Source of the DNA: Camelus dromedarius
Taxonomy: Eukaryota
Direction: 5' to 3'
DNA length: 64,000 nt
Assembly (NCBI RefSeq): GCF_036321535.1
Contig: NC_087459.1
Coordinates: 9,300,001 to 9,364,000 of the forward strand
Shown: in pieces, positions 9,326 to 45,923 of the stretch
How the letters are laid out: every line of letters begins with the position of its first letter
Position numbering within the stretch: position 1 is the stretch's first letter
The notes under the pieces: generated by a model
Seen by the model: the letters and a program-made list of their open reading frames with translations, nothing else
Databases searched by the model: none
What the model was told of the DNA's origin: nothing
Translations under genes and position numbers: made by a program

Positions 9326-12300
9326 AGTTCCACTTCCAGCTCCATAGTGTAGAGGCTAAATCCCAGCTGAGTGTAGCAGAGAGGCTGGTTTCCCTCCTTT
9401 CACCAGCTCCTACTCCTAGGGCAGAAGTTCTAACTCAGCTCCAGCAGGCTGGCAATACTAGAGCCCAACTGCTAAAGTCCCAGCTCATTCCTAAGGAGAA
9501 GGCTCCACACTGGGAGAGGCAAGCCAGCAAGGCCAGAGGCTACTGCCTTCTTTATAAGGCAGCAGTGACATTCAGAGACAGGTGCCACTATCCTTGCCCC
9601 CAGCTCCAGAGTTGTGGCTCAGAGACTCTGCCCAGGGGAGAGGTAGGTCATAAAACAGAGAGCACCAAAGCTCTCTCTGCAAAAAAACTGACTTTATTAG
9701 AAGCACAGTGTGCTCATGCAACCTAATAACAAAAAAACAAGCCACCCAATCCAAAAATGGGCAGAAGACCTAAACAAGNNNNNNNNNNNNNNNNNNNNNN
9801 NNNNNNNNNNNNNNNNNNNNNNNNNNNNNNNNNNNNNNNNNNNNNNNNNNNNNNNNNNNNNNNNNNNNNNNNNNNNNNNNNNNNNNNNNNNNNNNNNNNN
9901 NNNNNNNNNNNNNNNNNNCCACAAACNNNNNNNNNNNNNNNNNNNNNNNNNNNNNNNNNNNNNNNNNNNNNNNNNNNNNNNNNNNNNNNNNNNNNNNNNN
10001 NNNNNNNNNNNNNNNNNNNNNNNNNNNNNNNNNNNNNNNNNNNNNNNNNNNNNNNNNNNNNNNNNNNNNNNNNNNNNNNNNNNNNNNNNNNNNAAACTTA
10101 ATTGAAAAAGATACATGTGTCCCAATGTGCACAGCAGCAGCATTTACAATAGCCAAGACACGGAAACAACCTAAATGTCTATCGACAGATGATTGGATAA
10201 AGAAGTTGTGGTATATTTATACAATGGAATAATACTCAGCAATAAAAAATTAATAAAATAATGCCATTTGCAGCAACATGGATGGACCTAGAGAATGTCA
10301 TTCTAAGTGAAGTAAGCTAGAAAGAGAAAGAAAAATACTATATGATATCACTTATATGTGGAATCTTAAAAAAAAAAAAGACAGACAAACTTATTTACAA
10401 AACAGAAACAGACTCATGGACATAGAAAACAAACTTATGGTTACCAGTGGGGGAAGGGGGTGGGAAGGGATAAATTGAGAGTTGGATATTTGCAGATACT
10501 AACTAATATATATAAAATAGATAAACAAGTTTATGCTATATAGCACAGGGGACTATATTCAATATCTTATAGTAACATGATTAAAAAGAATATGAAAATG
10601 AATATATGTATATTCCTATATGACTGAAATATTCTGCTGTACACCAGAAATTGATACAACATTGTAAACTAACTATACTTCAATAAATATATACTGAAAA
10701 AAAAAAAAAGAAAAGAACAGAAGCACATTTTGGGAAGTTCAAGCCTAAAGGCACTCTCAAAATCAATGGAGGTTTTGGTAGTAAGCAAATAGGAGGCTAG
10801 GACCTTCATTAGTGCTACAAGCTGAACCATAGGCCAGCTAGTTTACCAGAGACAAATGGGGAAAGAGATAGCTAAGAAGGGCTTTCCTGGGGTCAGAACA
10901 AACCTTAAACACTGAACTCAAAAGCTACCCCTTTAAAGCCCAAATTTGACTGGATCAATCCATGGAACAATTGATGTTCCAGGGTATTGTCAAAAATATT
11001 AGAGCAACCAGCCAGCAATAAGTGGAGCCTAACAGCTAGGTATGATTGGAGAAAAGACAAAGAGAGCCCCCACCCACCCTAAAACCACTGGCGTCCCAGG
11101 GTGGCTGTATACATGCCCAAGGCTGGGCCCTCTGAGGAGCAAAGCCAAAGGCTTCACACTGCAGGGAAAAGAGACAGCACTACAATGGTCCAGCCAGGCA
11201 CCAAACAAACAAGCAAACAACAATCCCAAGCCCTCGGGGGTGGAGTGAGGAACCAGTATCTGCAATTGCTACAACATATTATCTAAAATGTCCATTTTTC
11301 AACAACAACAGGAAATTACAAGATAGGCAAAGACACAGGAAAGGGTGACCCACACACAGGGAATAAAACAGGCAGCAGAAACTGCCTGTAGGAAAGACCA
11401 GATGTCAGATTTAACAGACAAAGATTTCAAACTAGCCTCTATAAATACGTTCAAAGAACTAAAGGCAACTACACTTGAAGAAGTAAAGGAAACACGATGA
11501 CAACATCTCACCAAATAGAGTATCAATAATGAGATAGAAATTACAAAAGAACCAAATGCAGAGTTGGAAAGTGCAATAACTGAAATGAAAAAAAAAAAAT
11601 TCACTGGAGGTGTTCAACAGTAGATTTGAATTGGCAGAAGAAATAATTAGTGAACTTGAAGATAGATTGATAAAGAGTATCCAACCTGAAGAATAGATGA
11701 AGAAAAGGAAACCAAGCCTCAGAGAAATGTAGGACAGCATTAAGTGAACCAGTGTATGCATGATAGGTACATTAGAAGAGAAGAGAAGGAGCAGGGAAAA
11801 TATGGATTAAAACTTCCGAAATGTGATTTAAAAAATAATAATAATATAGCTAAAAAGCTCAATGAACTTCAAGTAATATAAACGTAGAGATCCACACACA
11901 GACACACCACATTTAAAGTGCTGAAAGCCAAAAGCAAGGGGAAAATCTTGAAAGCAGCAACAGAAAAACAACTCATCACTTGGAACCATAAAATTAACAG
12001 CTGACTTCTCAAAAGAAGTAATGGAGGTCAGAACGAAGTGGAATGACATATTCAAGCATTAGGGGTGAAATTTTGTCAACTAAGAATCCTACATCCTACA
12101 AAACTATCTTCCGAATATAAAGGCAAAAAAGAGGTATTCCCAGATAAACAAAACAGAAATAATTCATTGTTAGGAGACCTGCTTTACAAGAAAAACTAAG
12201 GAAGTTCTTCAGGCTGAAAGCATGTGATCCCCAACAGTAATTCAGATCCACATAAAAAAAAGAGAGCCCCAATAAAGGCAATGATGTTGTATATGTAGTT

Positions 12301-13140
12301 TAAAAGACCGTACAAATTCATTATTTTTTCTCCTTTCTTCTTTTAGCTGATTTAAAAGCAAATTTATAAAACTATGTAATTGTATTGTTGGCATGTAATA
12401 TATGGAAATGTAATATACTTGCAAATAACAGCACAAAGAAGGTGTGTGGGAACAATACTAGAGAATGATACCACATAGTAACTCAAACCCACAGGAACAA
12501 GTGGAGAGAACCAGAAGAGGTAAATAAGGAGGTGAACATAATAAAAAAAATTAAAAAATTTTAAAATGAAAAACACTAAAAGAAAAAGTAGAAAAAGAAT
12601 AAATAAAGGTCAATGTAGCAAACGTTATACACATACACTTGCTTTTCTTTCTTCCCTTAGCTTCTTTAAGAAATTAAAGATGACCTAAATAAATGGAAAG
12701 ACATTATGGTTCATAGATCCAAAGACAATATAGATAAAACGGCAACACTGTCCAATTGATTAATTGGTCTACAGATTCAGCACAATCCCTATCAAAATCC
12801 TAGAGAACTTCTTTGCAGAAATTGACAAACTGGTCCTAAAAATCANNNNNNNNNNNNNNNNNNNNNNNNNNNNNNNNNNNNNNNNNNNNNNNNNNNNNNN
12901 NNNNNNNNNNNNNNNNNNNNNNNNNNNNNNNNNNNNNNNNNNNNNNNNNNNNNNNNNNNNNNNNNNNNNNNNNNNCATGNNNNNNNNNNNNNNNNNNNNN
13001 NNNNNNNNNNNNNNNNNNNNNNNNNNNNNNNNNNNNNNNNNNNNNNNNNNNNNNNNNNNNNNNNNNNNNNNNNNNNNNNNNNNNNNNNNNNNNNNNNNNN
13101 NNNNNNNNNNNNNGCAACTAGATATCCACATGCAAAATGT
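9325..13140 (+). mobile_element. Old degraded L1M (5' region, ORF1 remnant ~11250-12250, ORF2 fragment ~12670-13140), interrupted by a younger L1
   Basis: A-rich L1 text: cagatgtcagatttaacagacaaagatttcaaa, aagggaaaatcttgaaagcagca, aaatggaaagacat, tacagattcagcacaatccctatcaaaatcc; many stop codons. Confidence 0.7.
9708..10718 (+). mobile_element. Young 5'-truncated L1 (ORF2 end, 3'UTR, poly-A) with 9-bp TSD
   Basis: ccaaaaatgggcagaagacctaaac, gcagcaacatggatggacctagag, caataaa plus A-tail ~10696-10709; TSD AGAAGCACA at 9699-9707 and 10719-10727. Confidence 0.85.
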
Positions 13141-35849: not shown

Positions 35850-35977
35850 ATTTTTTAAATTTTTTTAGGGGGGAGGTAATTAGGTTTATTTATTTTTAGA
35901 AGCAGTACTGGGGATTGAAAACTAGGACCTTGTGTATGCTAAGCATGCGCTCTGCCACTTGAGCTGTATCTCCCCCC
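35850..35977 (-). mobile_element. Vic-1-like SINE
   Basis: gggggaggtaattaggtttattt...gtactgggattgaa...gaccttgtgtatgctaagcatgcgctctgccacttgagc; flanking ttggctttt duplication. Confidence 0.8.
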
Positions 35978-36119
35978 AAGATTGGCTTTTGAACTGATAT
36001 CGTTTCATCTTTTCTATAAGATTATTCAGCGAAAATTTGCAAATTGCATAGATATTGACCTACTAGGAGCAACATTCCAGAATCTCTAAAGACAAATCCC
36101 AAACGAGGAAATCCATGCT

Positions 36120-36445
36120 CTCTCTCATTGGCTGTCGCAGGAATGGGGCGGGGCGGGACGGTTGAGGGTTGCAGCGAATCAGTGGACCCTCAGGCCAGTT
36201 GGGGGCGCCCACTACATAGGCACCGCCTGGCCTCAGGGATAGTTGCGGGTGGAGCCTGCGGCATCTCTGGACACTGTGATCGGCTGGTACTAGGGGAGGG
36301 AGGGAAGAAGCCATTGAAGGAGAGCGCTGCTGCCTCTGATTGGCTGACACTGGTAACTCCAGGCGGCGGGAGAAATGCGTAGGCCGCCAGCGCACTGGCC
36401 TTTGATTGGCTGGAGCGCGTTGGCGCGCGGCTCCGATTGGCTGGG
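36120..36445. promoter_or_regulatory. CpG-island promoter with four inverted CCAAT (NF-Y) boxes and an E2F-like site
   Basis: ATTGGCT at 36127, 36339, 36405, 36436; TTGGCGCG at 36420-36427. Confidence 0.7.
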
Positions 36446-37169
36446 CCGTCCGCAGCGGGCTCGTAGCCACCTGCGGGAAGAACTAAAGATCCGCAGGCTA
36501 CGCGATTGTGACCCTGGAGCGGCGGTGGCAGCAGGGGCGGCCAAGCTGGCGGCGCGGCTTCCTCGCTCCCACTCGCATCCGCGGCTGGCCTGCGCCCGCG
36601 GCCACTCGCGGTTGGGCCGGGCCCGCTTGTCGCTGTCTCTGACCCCGCCGCCCGCGCCGTCCCTGCCGCACCCGCCGTTGCCCGGACTGCCGTCCAGCCT
36701 GAGCCCCGGGCCGCCTGCGCTGCCCTCGGCGCTCGCTCTGGCCGAGCTGCCACCGCTGCCCGCGCTCCCGCTGCGGCCCGAGCCGCTGGCGCCCTGGGGC
36801 CCCAGCGCCCACGTGGCGCTGCCCGAGCTGCCGCCTTCGGCCTGCGCGCCCGCGCCGCCCGCCGCCGCGCTCGCCCTGCAGGGCCTGCCGCGCCTGCCAG
36901 CGCCCTCGCCGCCGCCCGCGCACCTGCCACTGCCGCCGCTGCCCGAGGCCGCAGTCGCCAACACACCAGGGCCGGTGGGCGCGCGCGGCCGTCCGCCCCT
37001 CATCGCCGAGCCGCCCCCGCAGCCGCTGCCGCCGCTGCCCGCGAGGCCCTCGCCCTTCAACCTGCTGGCGCCGCCTGCGCCCAGCGACCCCTGGCAGCTG
37101 CCCGCCTTCCCCCCACAGCTGCGGCCGCCGCCCCCGCCAACCTACTTTTTCCTGTTGCCACCCTGTTGA
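36375..37169 (+). CDS. Uncharacterised Pro/Leu/Ala-rich ORF (264 aa from ATG, or 207 aa from CTG 36546) in a putative two-exon gene
   Basis: Codon-like periodicity (CTG/CCG/CCC/GCG; T concentrated at codon position 2); donor CGG|GTGAGT at 37203, acceptor tttttcctactgctctacag at 37380, AATAAA at 37526 and 37577. Confidence 0.4.
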   Translation: MRRPPAHWPLIGWSALARGSDWLGRPQRARSHLREELKIRRLRDCDPGAAVAAGAAKLAARLPRSHSHPRLACARGHSRLGRARLSLSLTPPPAPSLPHPPLPGLPSSLSPGPPALPSALALAELPPLPALPLRPEPLAPWGPSAHVALPELPPSACAPAPPAAALALQGLPRLPAPSPPPAHLPLPPLPEAAVANTPGPVGARGRPPLIAEPPPQPLPPLPARPSPFNLLAPPAPSDPWQLPAFPPQLRPPPPPTYFFLLPPC

Positions 37170-38055
37170 AAGTCTGGCCCTCCCCTGGAGGGGCTGCGGG
37201 CGGGTGAGTAGGCAGCCCTGTCTGGACACAGGGGCCTCTGCCCCTCGCCGCCTTCCCCGACGGCAGATTCAGAAGGCTTGGGTCACAGCCTGGCTGGACG
37301 AAGAGGGCGCAGTGGAGGTTTGGGGGAGGAAGTCTGAAATTAAGCTCGTTTCTTCCATATTTTTTCCTACTGCTCTACAGCAAACCTCTTGCCTGGTCAT
37401 TTGAGAATGTAACTCATCTATCCCCTATACTGATAAACTGGCTGATGATCTGGGCCGTGGGGCACTCAGCTTGAGGAAATGACAACAGAATTTGAAATGC
37501 TTTAACTAAGAAAAAAGTATTTTTAAATAAAATGCTTTAACTGGCATACTCAAGATGTCTCATTTTCCCCTTTCACAATAAAGGTTTTGGATGCCATCGC
37601 TAAGGCCCACCTATGCTTAAGTTTGTATGGCTTTTCAGAAACTCAGAATCTGCCTTCCAAGTCTTAAAAAGTCAAACTCACAGCTGAAGTAGATCCCGGG
37701 GTCTCCTGGGGCTGGGCGCACCAGGAAAACAGTGGTGTTGATGGTCAACCGATACTGGGCCCTGAAACAGAAGTATCACATGCAAGGGTTGTGAAGTCCT
37801 CCCCACGGGACAGGAGAGCTCCCAGGGTGAGTTATAAGAGGAAGCCCCTGTTCTCTCCCCATCTTTACCTGCCCCCCCCCCCCCATTTACAACTCAGAAT
37901 AAAGTTCCCTTTGTTACTCAGGTGGCTTGGGCTCAGGTAACCAGGCAGACTCCTATCTCAAATGGGCTCTTCTACAGCAGCTCAGGAGTGGTATCAGGAA
38001 GCCAGCTTGACCTCGGGGGACCTGTGAGAGCCTGGAACTCACCAGGAAGAAGGAC

Positions 38056-43275: not shown

Positions 43276-43929
43276 ATGGCTTCAACTGGCCTTGAACTCC
43301 TGGGCATGACCCTGGCTGTGCTGGGCTGGCTGGGGACCCTGGTGTCCTGTGCCCTGCCCCTGTGGAAAGTGACTGCCTTCATCGGCAACAGCATCGTAGT
43401 GGCCCAGGTGGTGTGGGAGGGGCTGTGGATGTCCTGTGTGGTGCAGAGCACAGGCCAGATGCAGTGCAAGGTGTACGACTCGCTACTGGCGCTGCCCCAG
43501 GATCTGCAGGCAGCCCGAGCTCTCTGCATCATTGCCCTTCTGCTGGCTCTGCTTGGCCTCCTGGTGGCCATCACAGGCGCCCAGTGCACCACCTGCGTGG
43601 AGGATGAAGGTGCCAAGGCCCGCATCGTGCTCACAGCGGGAGTCATCCTCCTTCTCTCGGGCATCCTGGTGCTCATCCCCATCTGCTGGACCGCGCACGC
43701 CATCATCCAGGACTTCTACAACCCCCTGGTGGCAGAGGCCCTCAAGCGGGAGCTGGGAGCCTCCCTCTATGTGGGCTGGGCAGCAGCTGCCCTGCTCATG
43801 CTGGGAGGGGGCCTCCTCTGCTGCACCTGTCCCCCTCCCCAGATCGACCGGCCCCGCGGACCAAGACTGGGCTACTCCATCCCCTCCCGCTCTGGTGCAT
43901 CAGGGCTGGACAAGAGGGACTACGTATGA
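43276..43929 (+). CDS. CLDN9: Claudin-9, 217 aa, single coding exon
   Basis: [10 protein letters not shown]...[25 protein letters not shown]...[13 protein letters not shown]...GLDKRDYV; claudin signature and PDZ-binding YV. Confidence 0.97.
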
Positions 43930-45257: not shown

Positions 45258-45923
45258 TTAGACGTAATTCTTAGTGGGGTACTCAGAGGGACCCCGGGAG
45301 GTGGTATGTGGGGCTGATGCTGAGTATCGGGCCATATAATGTCTGGAGCTCCGGGACCCCCAGGAGGGGCAGGTGCAGCACAGTAGCCCCCCACCCAGCA
45401 ACAAAAGGCCAGAGGCAGCCCAGCCCACATAGAGGGAGGCTCCCAGCTCCCACTTTTGGGCCTCAGCCACCAGGGGGTTGTAGAAGTCTCGAATGATGGT
45501 GTTGGCCGTCCAGCACACGGGTATCAGGGTCAGGATCCCAGAGATGACAAAGATGATCCCGGAGGTGAGCACCAGTCGGGCCTTAGAGTCCTTGTCCATC
45601 ACGCAGGTGGTGCACTTGGCTCCGGCAAGGTAGATCAGGAAGCCGAGCAGGGCCACAAGGAGAGTGATGACGCTGAGGGCTCGGGCAGCCTGCAGGTCCT
45701 GGGGCAGCGCCAGTAGCGAGTCAAACACCTTGCACTGCATCTGGCCTGTGCTCTGCACCACGCAGGACATCCACGGCCCCTCCCACACCACCTGGGCTAC
45801 CACGATGCTGTTGCCGATGAAGGCAGTCACTTTCCACAGGGGCAGGGCACAGGACACCAGGGCATTCACCCAGCCAAGCAGTGACAGGACGATCCCCAGG
45901 ATTTGCAGACCAGCAAGGGCCAT
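45258..45923 (-). CDS. CLDN6: Claudin-6, 221 aa, single coding exon
   Basis: MALAGLQILG...NPLVAEAQKWELG...RGPSEYPTKNYV; Kozak cctcaccATGG; 5'UTR acceptor at 45950. Confidence 0.95.
   Translation of the reverse strand: MALAGLQILGIVLSLLGWVNALVSCALPLWKVTAFIGNSIVVAQVVWEGPWMSCVVQSTGQMQCKVFDSLLALPQDLQAARALSVITLLVALLGFLIYLAGAKCTTCVMDKDSKARLVLTSGIIFVISGILTLIPVCWTANTIIRDFYNPLVAEAQKWELGASLYVGWAASGLLLLGGGLLCCTCPSWGSRSSRHYMARYSASAPHTTSRGPSEYPTKNYV

What the first reader, a model, noticed from the sequence alone, without database searches (positions are those of the whole stretch)
36375..37600. Complete unannotated two-exon gene model: Pro/Leu-rich ORF, possible CUG start, NMD-safe 3'UTR intron
Seen: a CCAAT-rich CpG promoter and a 795-nt + strand ORF with codon-like periodicity and repeated LPPLP/ELPP motifs. 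A GT donor lies 34 nt after the stop (37203|GTGAGT), under the 50-55 nt NMD threshold. A strong acceptor sits at 37380 (177-nt intron) and AATAAA at 37526 and 37577. The only ATG (36375) is upstream of two CCAAT boxes and may not be transcribed. An in-frame CTG at 36546 has ideal context (gccAAG-CTG-G: A at -3, G at +4) and gives 207 aa. Inference: a hidden, possibly non-AUG, proline-rich disordered protein with SH3/WW/EVH1-type ligands, or a lncRNA. I recognise no homologue.
Basis: partly seen in the sequence, partly recalled or inferred. Interest (0 to 1): 0.72.

Follow-up and report, generated by a model that had tools for sequence, protein, structure and literature searches.

The report
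Conserved hidden CUG-start proline-rich gene
A 207-codon proline-rich reading frame between GREP1 and CLDN9 in this camel genome has no called gene and no conserved AUG, yet protein-level selection has kept it intact across placental mammals, so it is very probably a real, overlooked gene that starts at a CUG codon.

Summary
In camel alone the ORF proves nothing: the CpG island is 78-84% GC, five of six frames are open, and 36% of shuffles give an ORF this long.

Comparison with other mammals changes the picture. I reached orthologous loci through CLDN9 and CLDN6 and compared odontocetes, pig, rhinoceros, a murid, marmot and siamang.
- All 7 indels inside it are multiples of 3, against 10 of 56 in the flanks.
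- Third codon positions change 2-4 times faster than the others, and only between the CTG at 36546 and the stop.
- omega is 0.13 (2dlnL 255).
- Amino-acid identity across orders is 80-89%. An elephant-shrew model covers the ORF, and a marsupial prediction is collinear.

No in-frame ATG is conserved. The CTG in GCC-AAR-CTG-G is invariant. The donor 29-50 nt after the stop and the acceptor are conserved.

The scan has not noted this on other DNA. Other genomes carry only erratic automatic predictions, some fused to GREP1. Some lineages carry frameshifts.

The parts
36100..36545 (+). CpG-island promoter region. It holds four inverted CCAAT (ATTGG, NF-Y-type) boxes at 36127, 36339, 36405 and 36436, and GC boxes at 36146, 36151 and 36535. 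It is not under coding constraint.
   Evidence: The boxes are conserved in odontocetes, pig and rhinoceros, with positions. Substitutions are flat across the three phases (p=0.82 and 0.97). Only 4 of 25 indels are multiples of 3.
36375..36377 (+). It is kept in other Camelus assemblies but is not conserved in other orders.
   Evidence: Odontocetes, rhinoceros and marmot have no in-frame ATG within 300 nt upstream of the CTG, and pig's only one lies beyond an in-frame TAG. Frame-breaking indels lie between this ATG and the CTG.
36546..36548 (+). Proposed CUG initiation codon in GCC-AAG-CTG-G (A at -3, G at +4).
   Evidence: The hexamer context is invariant in the 8 aligned species and a murid RNA contig. 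Pig has AAA at the preceding codon, which keeps A at -3 but removes the AG. Codon-phase constraint starts here, not upstream.
36546..37169 (+). Conserved coding sequence of 207 codons plus TGA. The product is basic (pI about 11), 32% Pro, 18% Leu and 15% Ala. Its N-terminal 40 residues are Arg/Ser-rich with no acidic residue. It carries three LPPLP motifs and PxxP motifs.
   Evidence: It is the only frame free of stops in 8 species. omega is 0.131, 2dlnL 255. Pooled NG86 pN/pS is 0.35. Changes by phase are about 0.2/0.1/0.45 in each third of the ORF. All 7 indels are multiples of 3. Identity is 80-89%. Composition is and motifs.
36650..36692 (.). They lie inside the ORF (codons 35-49 counted from the CTG). 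I worked beside them and sent no letters of them to any search tool afterwards.
   Evidence: Later searches used 36546-36647, 36693-37166 or 37204 onward.
36975..36980 (+). Internal GT (ccg|GTGGGC) inside the ORF. Its orthologue is used as an alternative splice donor in a murid RNA contig.
   Evidence: L011 joins L012:8596 to L012:9892 with GT-AG ends.
37170..37203 (+). Short 3'UTR stretch of exon 1 between the stop and the donor (34 nt).
   Evidence: The distance from the stop to the exon end is 29-50 nt in all 8 species.
37204..37380 (+). Candidate intron of 177 nt: GTGAGT donor at 37204-37209, pyrimidine tract and CTACAG acceptor ending at 37380.
   Evidence: The donor GGTGAGT is present in all 8 species. 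The acceptor AG is present in 6 of the 7 species aligned there and lost in marmot. Four camel runs hold 33 of 53 sampled words of 37204-37700, which is the number expected if only 37381-37700 is present. One run holds 0.93, so there the intron is retained or the RNA is unspliced.
37381..37826 (+). Candidate exon 2 (3'UTR). Its end is unknown. Possible poly(A) signals are at 37577 and 37898, and a possible further donor (GGTGAGT) is at 37826/37827.
   Evidence: The block TTTGAGAATGTAAC is conserved across orders. AATAAA at 37577 is kept in rhinoceros and siamang, is AGTAAA in odontocetes, and is lost in pig. The donor at 37827 is conserved in Laurasiatheria only. RNA word shares imply coverage to at least about 37700.
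37920..37921 (+). Second conserved acceptor (ttactcAG|gtggc), followed by a conserved downstream exon-like block.
   Evidence: It is conserved in all the species aligned there, and it is the acceptor used in the murid RNA contig L011.

Best explanation
Window 36546-37169 (+) is a real protein-coding sequence of an overlooked mammalian gene lying between GREP1 and CLDN9.

Shown: it is conserved and under purifying selection at the protein level across placental orders, and probably in marsupials.

Inferred:
- It is transcribed from its own CpG-island promoter carrying NF-Y-type boxes.
- It is translated from the invariant CUG at 36546 in a strong Kozak context, because no AUG is conserved.
- It ends 34 nt before a conserved splice donor, so the rest of the mRNA is 3'UTR exon(s).
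- The product is about 205 aa, very basic and intrinsically disordered, rich in Pro, Leu and Ala. It has an Arg/Ser-rich N-terminus free of acidic residues and invariant LPPLP/PxxP blocks.
- It most likely acts as a docking ligand for proline-recognition domains (EVH1, SH3, WW or profilin type).
- The N-terminal segment may be a targeting signal. This is speculation.
For: - Orthologous loci from 7 other species align throughout.
- Only this frame lacks stops in all 8 species.
- Amino-acid identity between orders is 80-89%.
- Codon model: omega 0.131, 2dlnL 255 against omega=1. Pooled NG86 pN/pS is 0.35; four of the other five frames are at or above 1.2, and the antisense frame that shares the wobble is 0.41.
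- Phase-specific substitution is confined to 36546-37166 (p=0.003, 3.5e-5 and 0.0012 in the three thirds). It is flat in the promoter, in the 85 nt before the CTG, in the intron and downstream.
- Indels: 7 of 7 are multiples of 3 inside the ORF, against 10 of 56 in the flanks.
- Natural control: two related species with decayed copies carry many 1-2 nt indels and nearly flat phase counts, 11/9/14.
- Start: no conserved in-frame ATG. Pig has an in-frame TAG 19 codons upstream and marmot one 38 codons upstream, with no ATG after either. The CTG context is invariant.
- Depth: an elephant-shrew gene model covers the ORF through to its end, the visible tenrec C-terminus is conserved, and a collinear marsupial prediction exists.
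- Gene structure: conserved ATTGG boxes, donor and acceptors, and a spliced GT-AG murid RNA contig from the locus.
- Camel RNA-seq contigs from several studies hold the locus.
- No fold (pTM 0.13) and no Pfam family.
Against: - There is no direct evidence of translation or of the initiation site.
- The camel junction, strand and transcription start could not be read.
- About 30 nt before the CTG (GGN-CCT-GGN...) look partly conserved with third-position-like variation. Initiation could therefore lie slightly upstream at a codon that is not conserved.
- Rhinoceros and odontocetes have an out-of-frame ATG 44 or 37 nt upstream. This would compete with the CUG unless the transcription start lies downstream of it.
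- Several gene models in other species attach the ORF to GREP1 exons.
- The murid RNA contig begins more than 250 nt upstream of the CTG and uses an internal donor that replaces the C-terminus.
- Frameshifted copies exist in two unidentified species, in a murid Logan cluster and in a colugo model. The gene is therefore dispensable in some lineages.
- The antisense frame that shares the wobble position has a similar omega of 0.16.
Confidence: 0.7

Rival explanations
1. The ORF is the C-terminal coding exon of a long GREP1 isoform. GREP1 exons would splice into it, so it needs no start codon of its own.
For: RefSeq and other models in Delphinus (named GREP1, 732 aa), Lipotes, Elephantulus, Dipodomys, Cynocephalus and Cricetulus join GREP1-like Gly-rich exons to this ORF. 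In two odontocete loci the upstream gene call ends exactly at this ORF's stop.
Against: - The junction differs in every model. It ranges from the CCAAT-box region to inside the ORF, so there is no conserved acceptor.
- The sequence between those junctions and the CTG shows no coding signature and has frame-breaking indels.
- The only AG at the boundary of constraint (AAG|CTG) follows a purine-rich stretch and is AAA in pig.
- A conserved CpG-island promoter lies directly upstream.
- Camel, pig, one odontocete and one rhinoceros annotation end GREP1 well upstream.
Confidence: 0.12
2. Translation starts somewhere other than the CUG. Candidates are the lineage-specific upstream AUGs (36375 in camel, giving 264 aa) or another near-cognate codon a few codons upstream.
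For: Camel, siamang, Arvicanthis and one murid have an in-frame ATG 19-58 codons upstream with the frame open. The murid RNA contig includes its ATG. The roughly 10 codons before the CTG look weakly constrained.
Against: These ATGs are not homologous. They are absent within the open frame in pig, marmot, odontocetes and rhinoceros. The 85 nt before the CTG evolve fast and without phase.
Confidence: 0.15
3. It is a chance ORF in a GC-rich CpG island. The locus would be only a promoter plus the first exon of a lncRNA or an alternative CLDN9 5' exon.
For: Five of six frames are open in camel, and 36% of shuffles give an ORF this long. There is no Pfam family or Atlas relative and no Rfam hit.
Against: A non-coding exon does not give omega 0.13, indels only in multiples of 3, or phase-specific substitution bounded by the CTG and the stop. 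It also would not give 80-89% amino-acid identity between rodents, a primate and ungulates.
Confidence: 0.04
4. The selected frame is the antisense Gly/Ser/Ala-rich frame that shares the wobble position (36290-37060, minus strand).
For: omega is 0.16 and pN/pS 0.41 in that frame, close to the + frame.
Against: - That frame has stops in 5 of 8 species.
- Position-1 changes exceed position-2 changes in all six pairs, as expected for the + frame.
- The donor, the acceptors and the spliced murid contig are all + strand.
Confidence: 0.02

Closest known systems
Automatic predictions of the orthologue: LOC131422032 (Diceros bicornis minor, 268 aa), LOC143442869 (Arvicanthis niloticus, 262 aa), an uncharacterized Symphalangus syndactylus protein (257 aa), a Marmota monax hypothetical protein (272 aa) and LOC127545667 (Antechinus flavipes, 302 aa)
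   Same: The same conserved reading frame, with a stop at or within four codons of the same place in the placentals. Identity to the camel C-terminal 158 aa is 82-86% in placentals. The marsupial protein is collinear in its motifs.
   Different: Each model invents a different, non-homologous ATG-initiated N-terminus, some through an added upstream exon. None is named or characterised. The camel assembly has no model at all.
[quoted passage not shown]
   Same: It is adjacent on the same strand, and several gene predictors fuse the two. GREP1 was also long taken for non-coding (bioRxiv 10.1101/2020.03.10.981001).
   Different: GREP1 is Gly-rich, has a signal peptide and is built from many tiny exons. 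This ORF is Pro/Leu/Ala-rich, has no signal peptide, sits in one exon and lies behind its own CpG-island promoter. The paper's description of GREP1 mentions no proline-rich part.
Mammalian proteins made only from non-AUG codons, for example POLGARF (CUG; PMC7059407) and, from my own knowledge, EIF4G2/DAP5 (GUG)
   Same: A conserved ORF with a coding signature but no conserved AUG, and a near-cognate codon in a strong Kozak context where the signature begins.
   Different: POLGARF overlaps a known CDS, and EIF4G2 is a long-known gene. This ORF stands alone behind its own promoter and is not recognised as a gene. Initiation here is inferred, not measured.
Proline-rich docking regions such as formin FH1 and Ena/VASP-, SH3- and WW-binding segments (from my own knowledge)
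   Same: It is disordered and about one third proline. It has repeated, invariant LPPLP ([FWYL]PxΦP), PPLP and PxxPxR motifs.
   Different: There is no attached folded domain and no sequence homology to any such protein. Binding has not been tested.

Membership tests
Protein-coding sequence under purifying selection | The reading frame is intact in orthologues | tested here: met
   No stops in camel, two odontocetes, pig, rhinoceros, Arvicanthis, siamang and marmot. All five other frames have stops in some of these species. Exceptions: frameshifted copies in two unidentified species, a murid cluster and a colugo model.
Protein-coding sequence under purifying selection | dN/dS well below 1, with excess third-position change limited to the ORF | tested here: met
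   omega is 0.131, 2dlnL 255. Phase effects appear only between 36546 and 37166.
Protein-coding sequence under purifying selection | Indels keep the frame | tested here: met
   7 of 7 gap runs are multiples of 3, against 10 of 56 in the flanks.
Protein-coding sequence under purifying selection | Transcribed and translated | tested here: inconclusive
   Camel RNA-seq contigs hold 0.5-0.93 of the sampled words, and a spliced murid contig exists. Strand, junction and translation could not be tested here.
Non-AUG (CUG)-initiated ORF | No conserved in-frame AUG upstream within the open frame | tested here: met
   Pig and marmot have an in-frame stop and then no ATG, and odontocetes and rhinoceros have none in frame.
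Non-AUG (CUG)-initiated ORF | A conserved near-cognate codon in a strong context where the coding signature begins | tested here: met
   GCC-AAR-CTG-GCG is invariant. The region just upstream shows a flat phase pattern. The resolution is about 30 nt.
Non-AUG (CUG)-initiated ORF | Initiating ribosomes or an N-terminal peptide mapped to the codon | not testable with these tools
   No Ribo-seq or proteomics tool was available.
GREP1 (as its terminal exon) | A conserved splice acceptor joining GREP1 exons in frame | tested here: not met
   The junction differs in every fused model. The AG before the CTG is absent in pig and is preceded by purines.
3'UTR intron that escapes NMD (stop no more than 50-55 nt before the last junction) | Distance from the stop to the donor | tested here: met
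   34, 50, 50, 47, 47, 29, 32 and 41 nt in the 8 species.
3'UTR intron that escapes NMD (stop no more than 50-55 nt before the last junction) | This junction is used and is the last one | tested here: inconclusive
   The word shares fit removal of the intron in four runs and retention in one. Further conserved splice sites at 37827 and 37921 may add a later junction.
Proline-recognition-domain ligands (EVH1, SH3, WW) | Consensus motifs are present and conserved | tested here: met
   Three LPPLP, three PPLP, two PxxPxR and one RxxPxxP. The core prolines and leucines are invariant. PPxY is not conserved.
Proline-recognition-domain ligands (EVH1, SH3, WW) | Binding to such domains | not tested
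   No partner is known, so I sent no complex prediction.
Any Pfam family | A match to a curated profile | tested here: not met
   No families at E up to 1 for either piece.

The most novel reading that the evidence does not exclude
This is a therian-wide protein-coding gene that no curated annotation recognises. It would be translated solely from a CUG codon behind its own NF-Y-type promoter. It would found a new family of basic, disordered proline-rich adaptor proteins that gene finders either miss or wrongly weld onto GREP1.
Probability: 0.45. Interest if true: 0.85.

Novelty: new member of a known kind. Interest (0 to 1): 0.75.

Why it matters
Conserved mammalian genes of about 200 codons that are still missing from annotation are rare. 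Those without any AUG are systematically missed by gene finders and by AUG-only Ribo-seq ORF catalogues.

This case gives a concrete, testable example with clear boundaries: the CUG at 36546, the stop at 37167 and a conserved donor 29-50 nt downstream. It also gives a natural control, namely lineages where the gene has decayed. And it explains the inconsistent 'GREP1', 'basic proline-rich protein-like' and 'collagen-like' fusion models found in several genomes.

If it is confirmed, GREP1 and CLDN9-region annotations would need correcting in many mammals, and a new proline-rich protein would become available for functional study.

Tried and rejected
A second call beside those places was blocked by the cap. 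No read-level view of junctions, strand or ends was therefore possible. All searches used neighbouring pieces.
- The two sequencing-run runs give only word shares. These are suggestive, not proof.
- Pfam, the ESM Atlas and Rfam found nothing.
- RNA folding downstream of the CUG gave -42.9 kcal/mol but z = 0.31, so it is no more structured than its composition predicts.
- Six paper searches and two full-text look-ups found no description of this ORF (48, 64, 80).
- The rodent, marmot and siamang loci did not reach CLDN9 within 8 kb, so I did not attempt Mus through CLDN9.
- The tenrec locus has an assembly gap over most of the ORF. I did not fill it.
- I considered and rejected the antisense frame, a splice acceptor at AAG|CTG, and a chance ORF (see the rival explanations).
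- I did not fetch or use human sequence.
Full report
WHERE WE ARE. ORFs in the window identify PAQR4 and PKMYT1 (3-9 kb), CLDN9 (43276-43926, +), CLDN6 (45261-45923, -) and BICDL2 (about 56-61 kb). An exact look-up of the CLDN9 product places the window on CM070333.1 of assembly GCA_036321535.1, a camel, where window coordinate = L001 coordinate + 33275. The finding therefore lies in the 9.6-kb gap between GREP1 and CLDN9. No protein gene is called there in this assembly or in two other Camelus assemblies; a third has an N run over the place.

THE OBSERVATION. The 'CCAAT boxes' are four inverted ATTGG boxes. The island has 78-84% GC and a CpG observed/expected ratio near 1.

Taken alone, the ORF is not evidence of a gene. 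Five of six frames are open for more than 240 codons. The per-frame chance of 264 open codons at this composition is about 0.10. In addition, 181 of 500 dinucleotide shuffles contain an open run that long.

COMPARATIVE EVIDENCE. I used members of the CLDN9 protein cluster and of the CLDN6 cluster as anchors, and later the few database orthologues. With these I fetched the orthologous DNA of four odontocetes, pig, two rhinoceroses, Arvicanthis, siamang, marmot, three further Camelus assemblies and a tenrec. The whole of 35982-38000 aligns at 72-80% identity to the whale, pig and rhinoceros loci. Five results follow.

1. Open frame. Every other frame has stops in some of them, including the antisense frame that shares the wobble position.

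2. Indels. In the nucleotide alignment of camel, two odontocetes, pig and two rhinoceroses, all seven gap runs between the CTG and the stop are multiples of three (3, 3, 6, 6, 9, 12, 15). In the promoter, intron and downstream flanks only 10 of 56 are.

3. Substitution by codon phase. Changes per phase are about 0.2, 0.1 and 0.45 in each third of the ORF (p = 0.003, 3.5e-5 and 0.0012). They are flat in the promoter (p = 0.82), in the 85 nt just before the CTG (p = 0.97), in the 3'UTR plus intron (p = 0.70) and downstream (p = 0.67). Positions 1 and 2 evolve several times more slowly than the flanks, while position 3 evolves about as fast as the flanks.

4. Codon models. Pooled Nei-Gojobori pN/pS is 0.35 in this frame and 1.2-2.0 in four other frames. 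A codon model on the fixed species tree gives omega 0.131, with 2dlnL = 255 against omega = 1.

5. Protein identity. Amino-acid identity between orders is 80-89%, including murid against ungulate. The C-terminal 158 residues have 92 invariant columns.

A NATURAL CONTROL. Two Logan contigs (L010 and L016) come from two related, unidentified species. They are 91% alike and are nearest to odontocetes among my set. Relative to the rhinoceros CDS, L010 has four indels that are not multiples of 3 and L016 has eleven, one shared by both. Substitutions between the two are nearly flat across phases, 11/9/14. So the local mutation process does not create the periodicity by itself. The gene has also been lost in at least one lineage. 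A murid Logan cluster (P0034, six contigs) and a colugo model also shift frame in the last quarter or half.

DEPTH OF CONSERVATION. A profile of the C-terminal part finds only 13 proteins among 1.84 billion representatives. Among them is an Elephantulus model whose last 150 or so residues are this ORF through to ...FFLSPPC. Another is a 302-aa Antechinus (marsupial) prediction that carries the same motif blocks in the same order. In the tenrec an assembly gap hides most of the ORF, but the visible last 40 residues are conserved. The gene is therefore at least placental and probably therian.

START CODON. No in-frame ATG is conserved.
- The ATGs of camel, siamang, Arvicanthis and one murid sit at different places.
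- Pig has an in-frame TAG 19 codons before the CTG and marmot one 38 codons before it, with no ATG after either.
- Odontocetes and rhinoceros have none in frame.
- Database models each invent a different N-terminus.
- GCC-AAR-CTG-GCG is invariant, with A at -3 and G at +4, and the coding signature begins there within about 30 nt.

A splice acceptor at AAG|CTG is unlikely, because the AG is AAA in pig and the preceding sequence is purine-rich. Three points weigh against it. The roughly 10 codons before the CTG show some third-position-like variation. Rhinoceros and odontocetes carry an out-of-frame ATG 44 or 37 nt upstream. Folding downstream of the CUG is stable but no more so than shuffles.

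GENE STRUCTURE AND RNA. The ATTGG boxes are conserved in Laurasiatheria. GGTGAGT follows the stop at 29-50 nt in all eight species. The acceptor at 37380 is kept in six of the seven species aligned there. A second acceptor at 37921 is kept in all of them, and a further donor at 37827 is kept in Laurasiatheria.

A murid Logan contig (L011) is a spliced RNA. It joins an internal donor of the ORF (orthologous to camel 36975) to the acceptor orthologous to 37921, with GT-AG ends on the + strand.

In camel, RNA-seq contig sets from several studies hold 0.28-0.62 of the sampled words of 36100-37700. For 37204-37700, four runs hold 0.62 (33 of 53 words). That is exactly the number expected if only 37381-37700 is present. 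One run holds 0.93, meaning the intron is retained or the RNA is unspliced.

THE FUSION RIVAL. Gnomon-type models in Delphinus (named GREP1), Lipotes, Elephantulus, Dipodomys, Cynocephalus and Cricetulus chain GREP1 exons to this ORF. The junction differs in each. The stretch between the junctions and the CTG lacks any coding signature, and a conserved promoter lies in between. I read these models as attempts by gene predictors to give an ATG-less ORF a start. The published description of human GREP1 mentions no proline-rich part. A real read-through isoform cannot be excluded without cDNA.

THE PROTEIN. Counted from the CUG it has 207 residues, pI about 11, and is 32% Pro, 18% Leu and 15% Ala. 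The first 40 residues carry 7-10 Arg/Lys and at most one acidic residue in the eight species. Invariant blocks include three LPPLP motifs, PxxPxR motifs and two Trp-containing motifs. AlphaFold gives pTM 0.13 and no fold. There is no Pfam family and no Atlas neighbour.

By analogy with known proline-rich ligands, it most likely works as a disordered docking protein for EVH1, SH3, WW or profilin-type domains. The basic N-terminus may be a targeting signal. Both points are inference.

NOVELTY. Six literature searches, including peptide strings, and look-ups in the whole-genome PhyloCSF paper and its supplements found no description of this ORF. Databases hold only scattered, mutually inconsistent automatic predictions. 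I did not examine human sequence, so I cannot say whether a current human annotation already lists it. That is the main uncertainty on novelty.

Noticed in passing
L002:1-3837, L003:1-3854, and proteins P0030-P0033, P0035, P0036: Gene predictors in dolphin, baiji, elephant shrew, kangaroo rat and colugo weld GREP1 exons onto this ORF. The junction differs each time, and the products are named 'GREP1', 'basic proline-rich protein-like' or 'collagen alpha-2(IV) chain-like'. These are likely annotation artefacts that inflate GREP1.
   Followed up: partly
L010:540-1300 and L016:500-1300 (Logan SRR23625869 and SRR23625870): Two related, unidentified mammals are 91% alike and nearest to odontocetes in my set. 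Both carry decayed copies of the ORF, L010 with four and L016 with eleven indels that are not multiples of 3, one shared. They may be ruminants, but the species could not be determined here.
   Followed up: partly
P0034 cluster (six Logan contigs, murid-like) and L011: One murid species has a frameshift after ...GARGRPP. Another murid's RNA contig splices out the same C-terminal quarter through an internal donor. The C-terminus therefore seems to have been remodelled in murids.
   Followed up: partly
L021:3520-3640 (tenrec): The tenrec stop codon TAA overlaps the splice donor (TG|GTAAGT), so splicing would remove the stop. Most of the ORF lies in an assembly gap.
   Followed up: no
window 37685-37800 and 37922-38030: Sequence blocks downstream of the ORF are strongly conserved across orders, for example GTCACATGCAAGG and CAGGAGTGGTATCAGGAAGCC. 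They may be further exons or regulatory elements upstream of CLDN9.
   Followed up: partly
window 35860-35980; 37876-37888; 9779-10093 and 12846-13113: A tRNA-derived SINE sits just upstream of the island. A run of 13 C sits before the AATAAA at 37898. Masked N runs lie inside the AT-rich 10-14 kb stretch; I left these untouched.
   Followed up: no
window 36546-37169 against L018 and L020 (other Camelus assemblies): Seven nucleotide differences and four amino-acid differences separate this camel from two other Camelus assemblies over 36375-37169. The ORF is intact in all three.
   Followed up: yes
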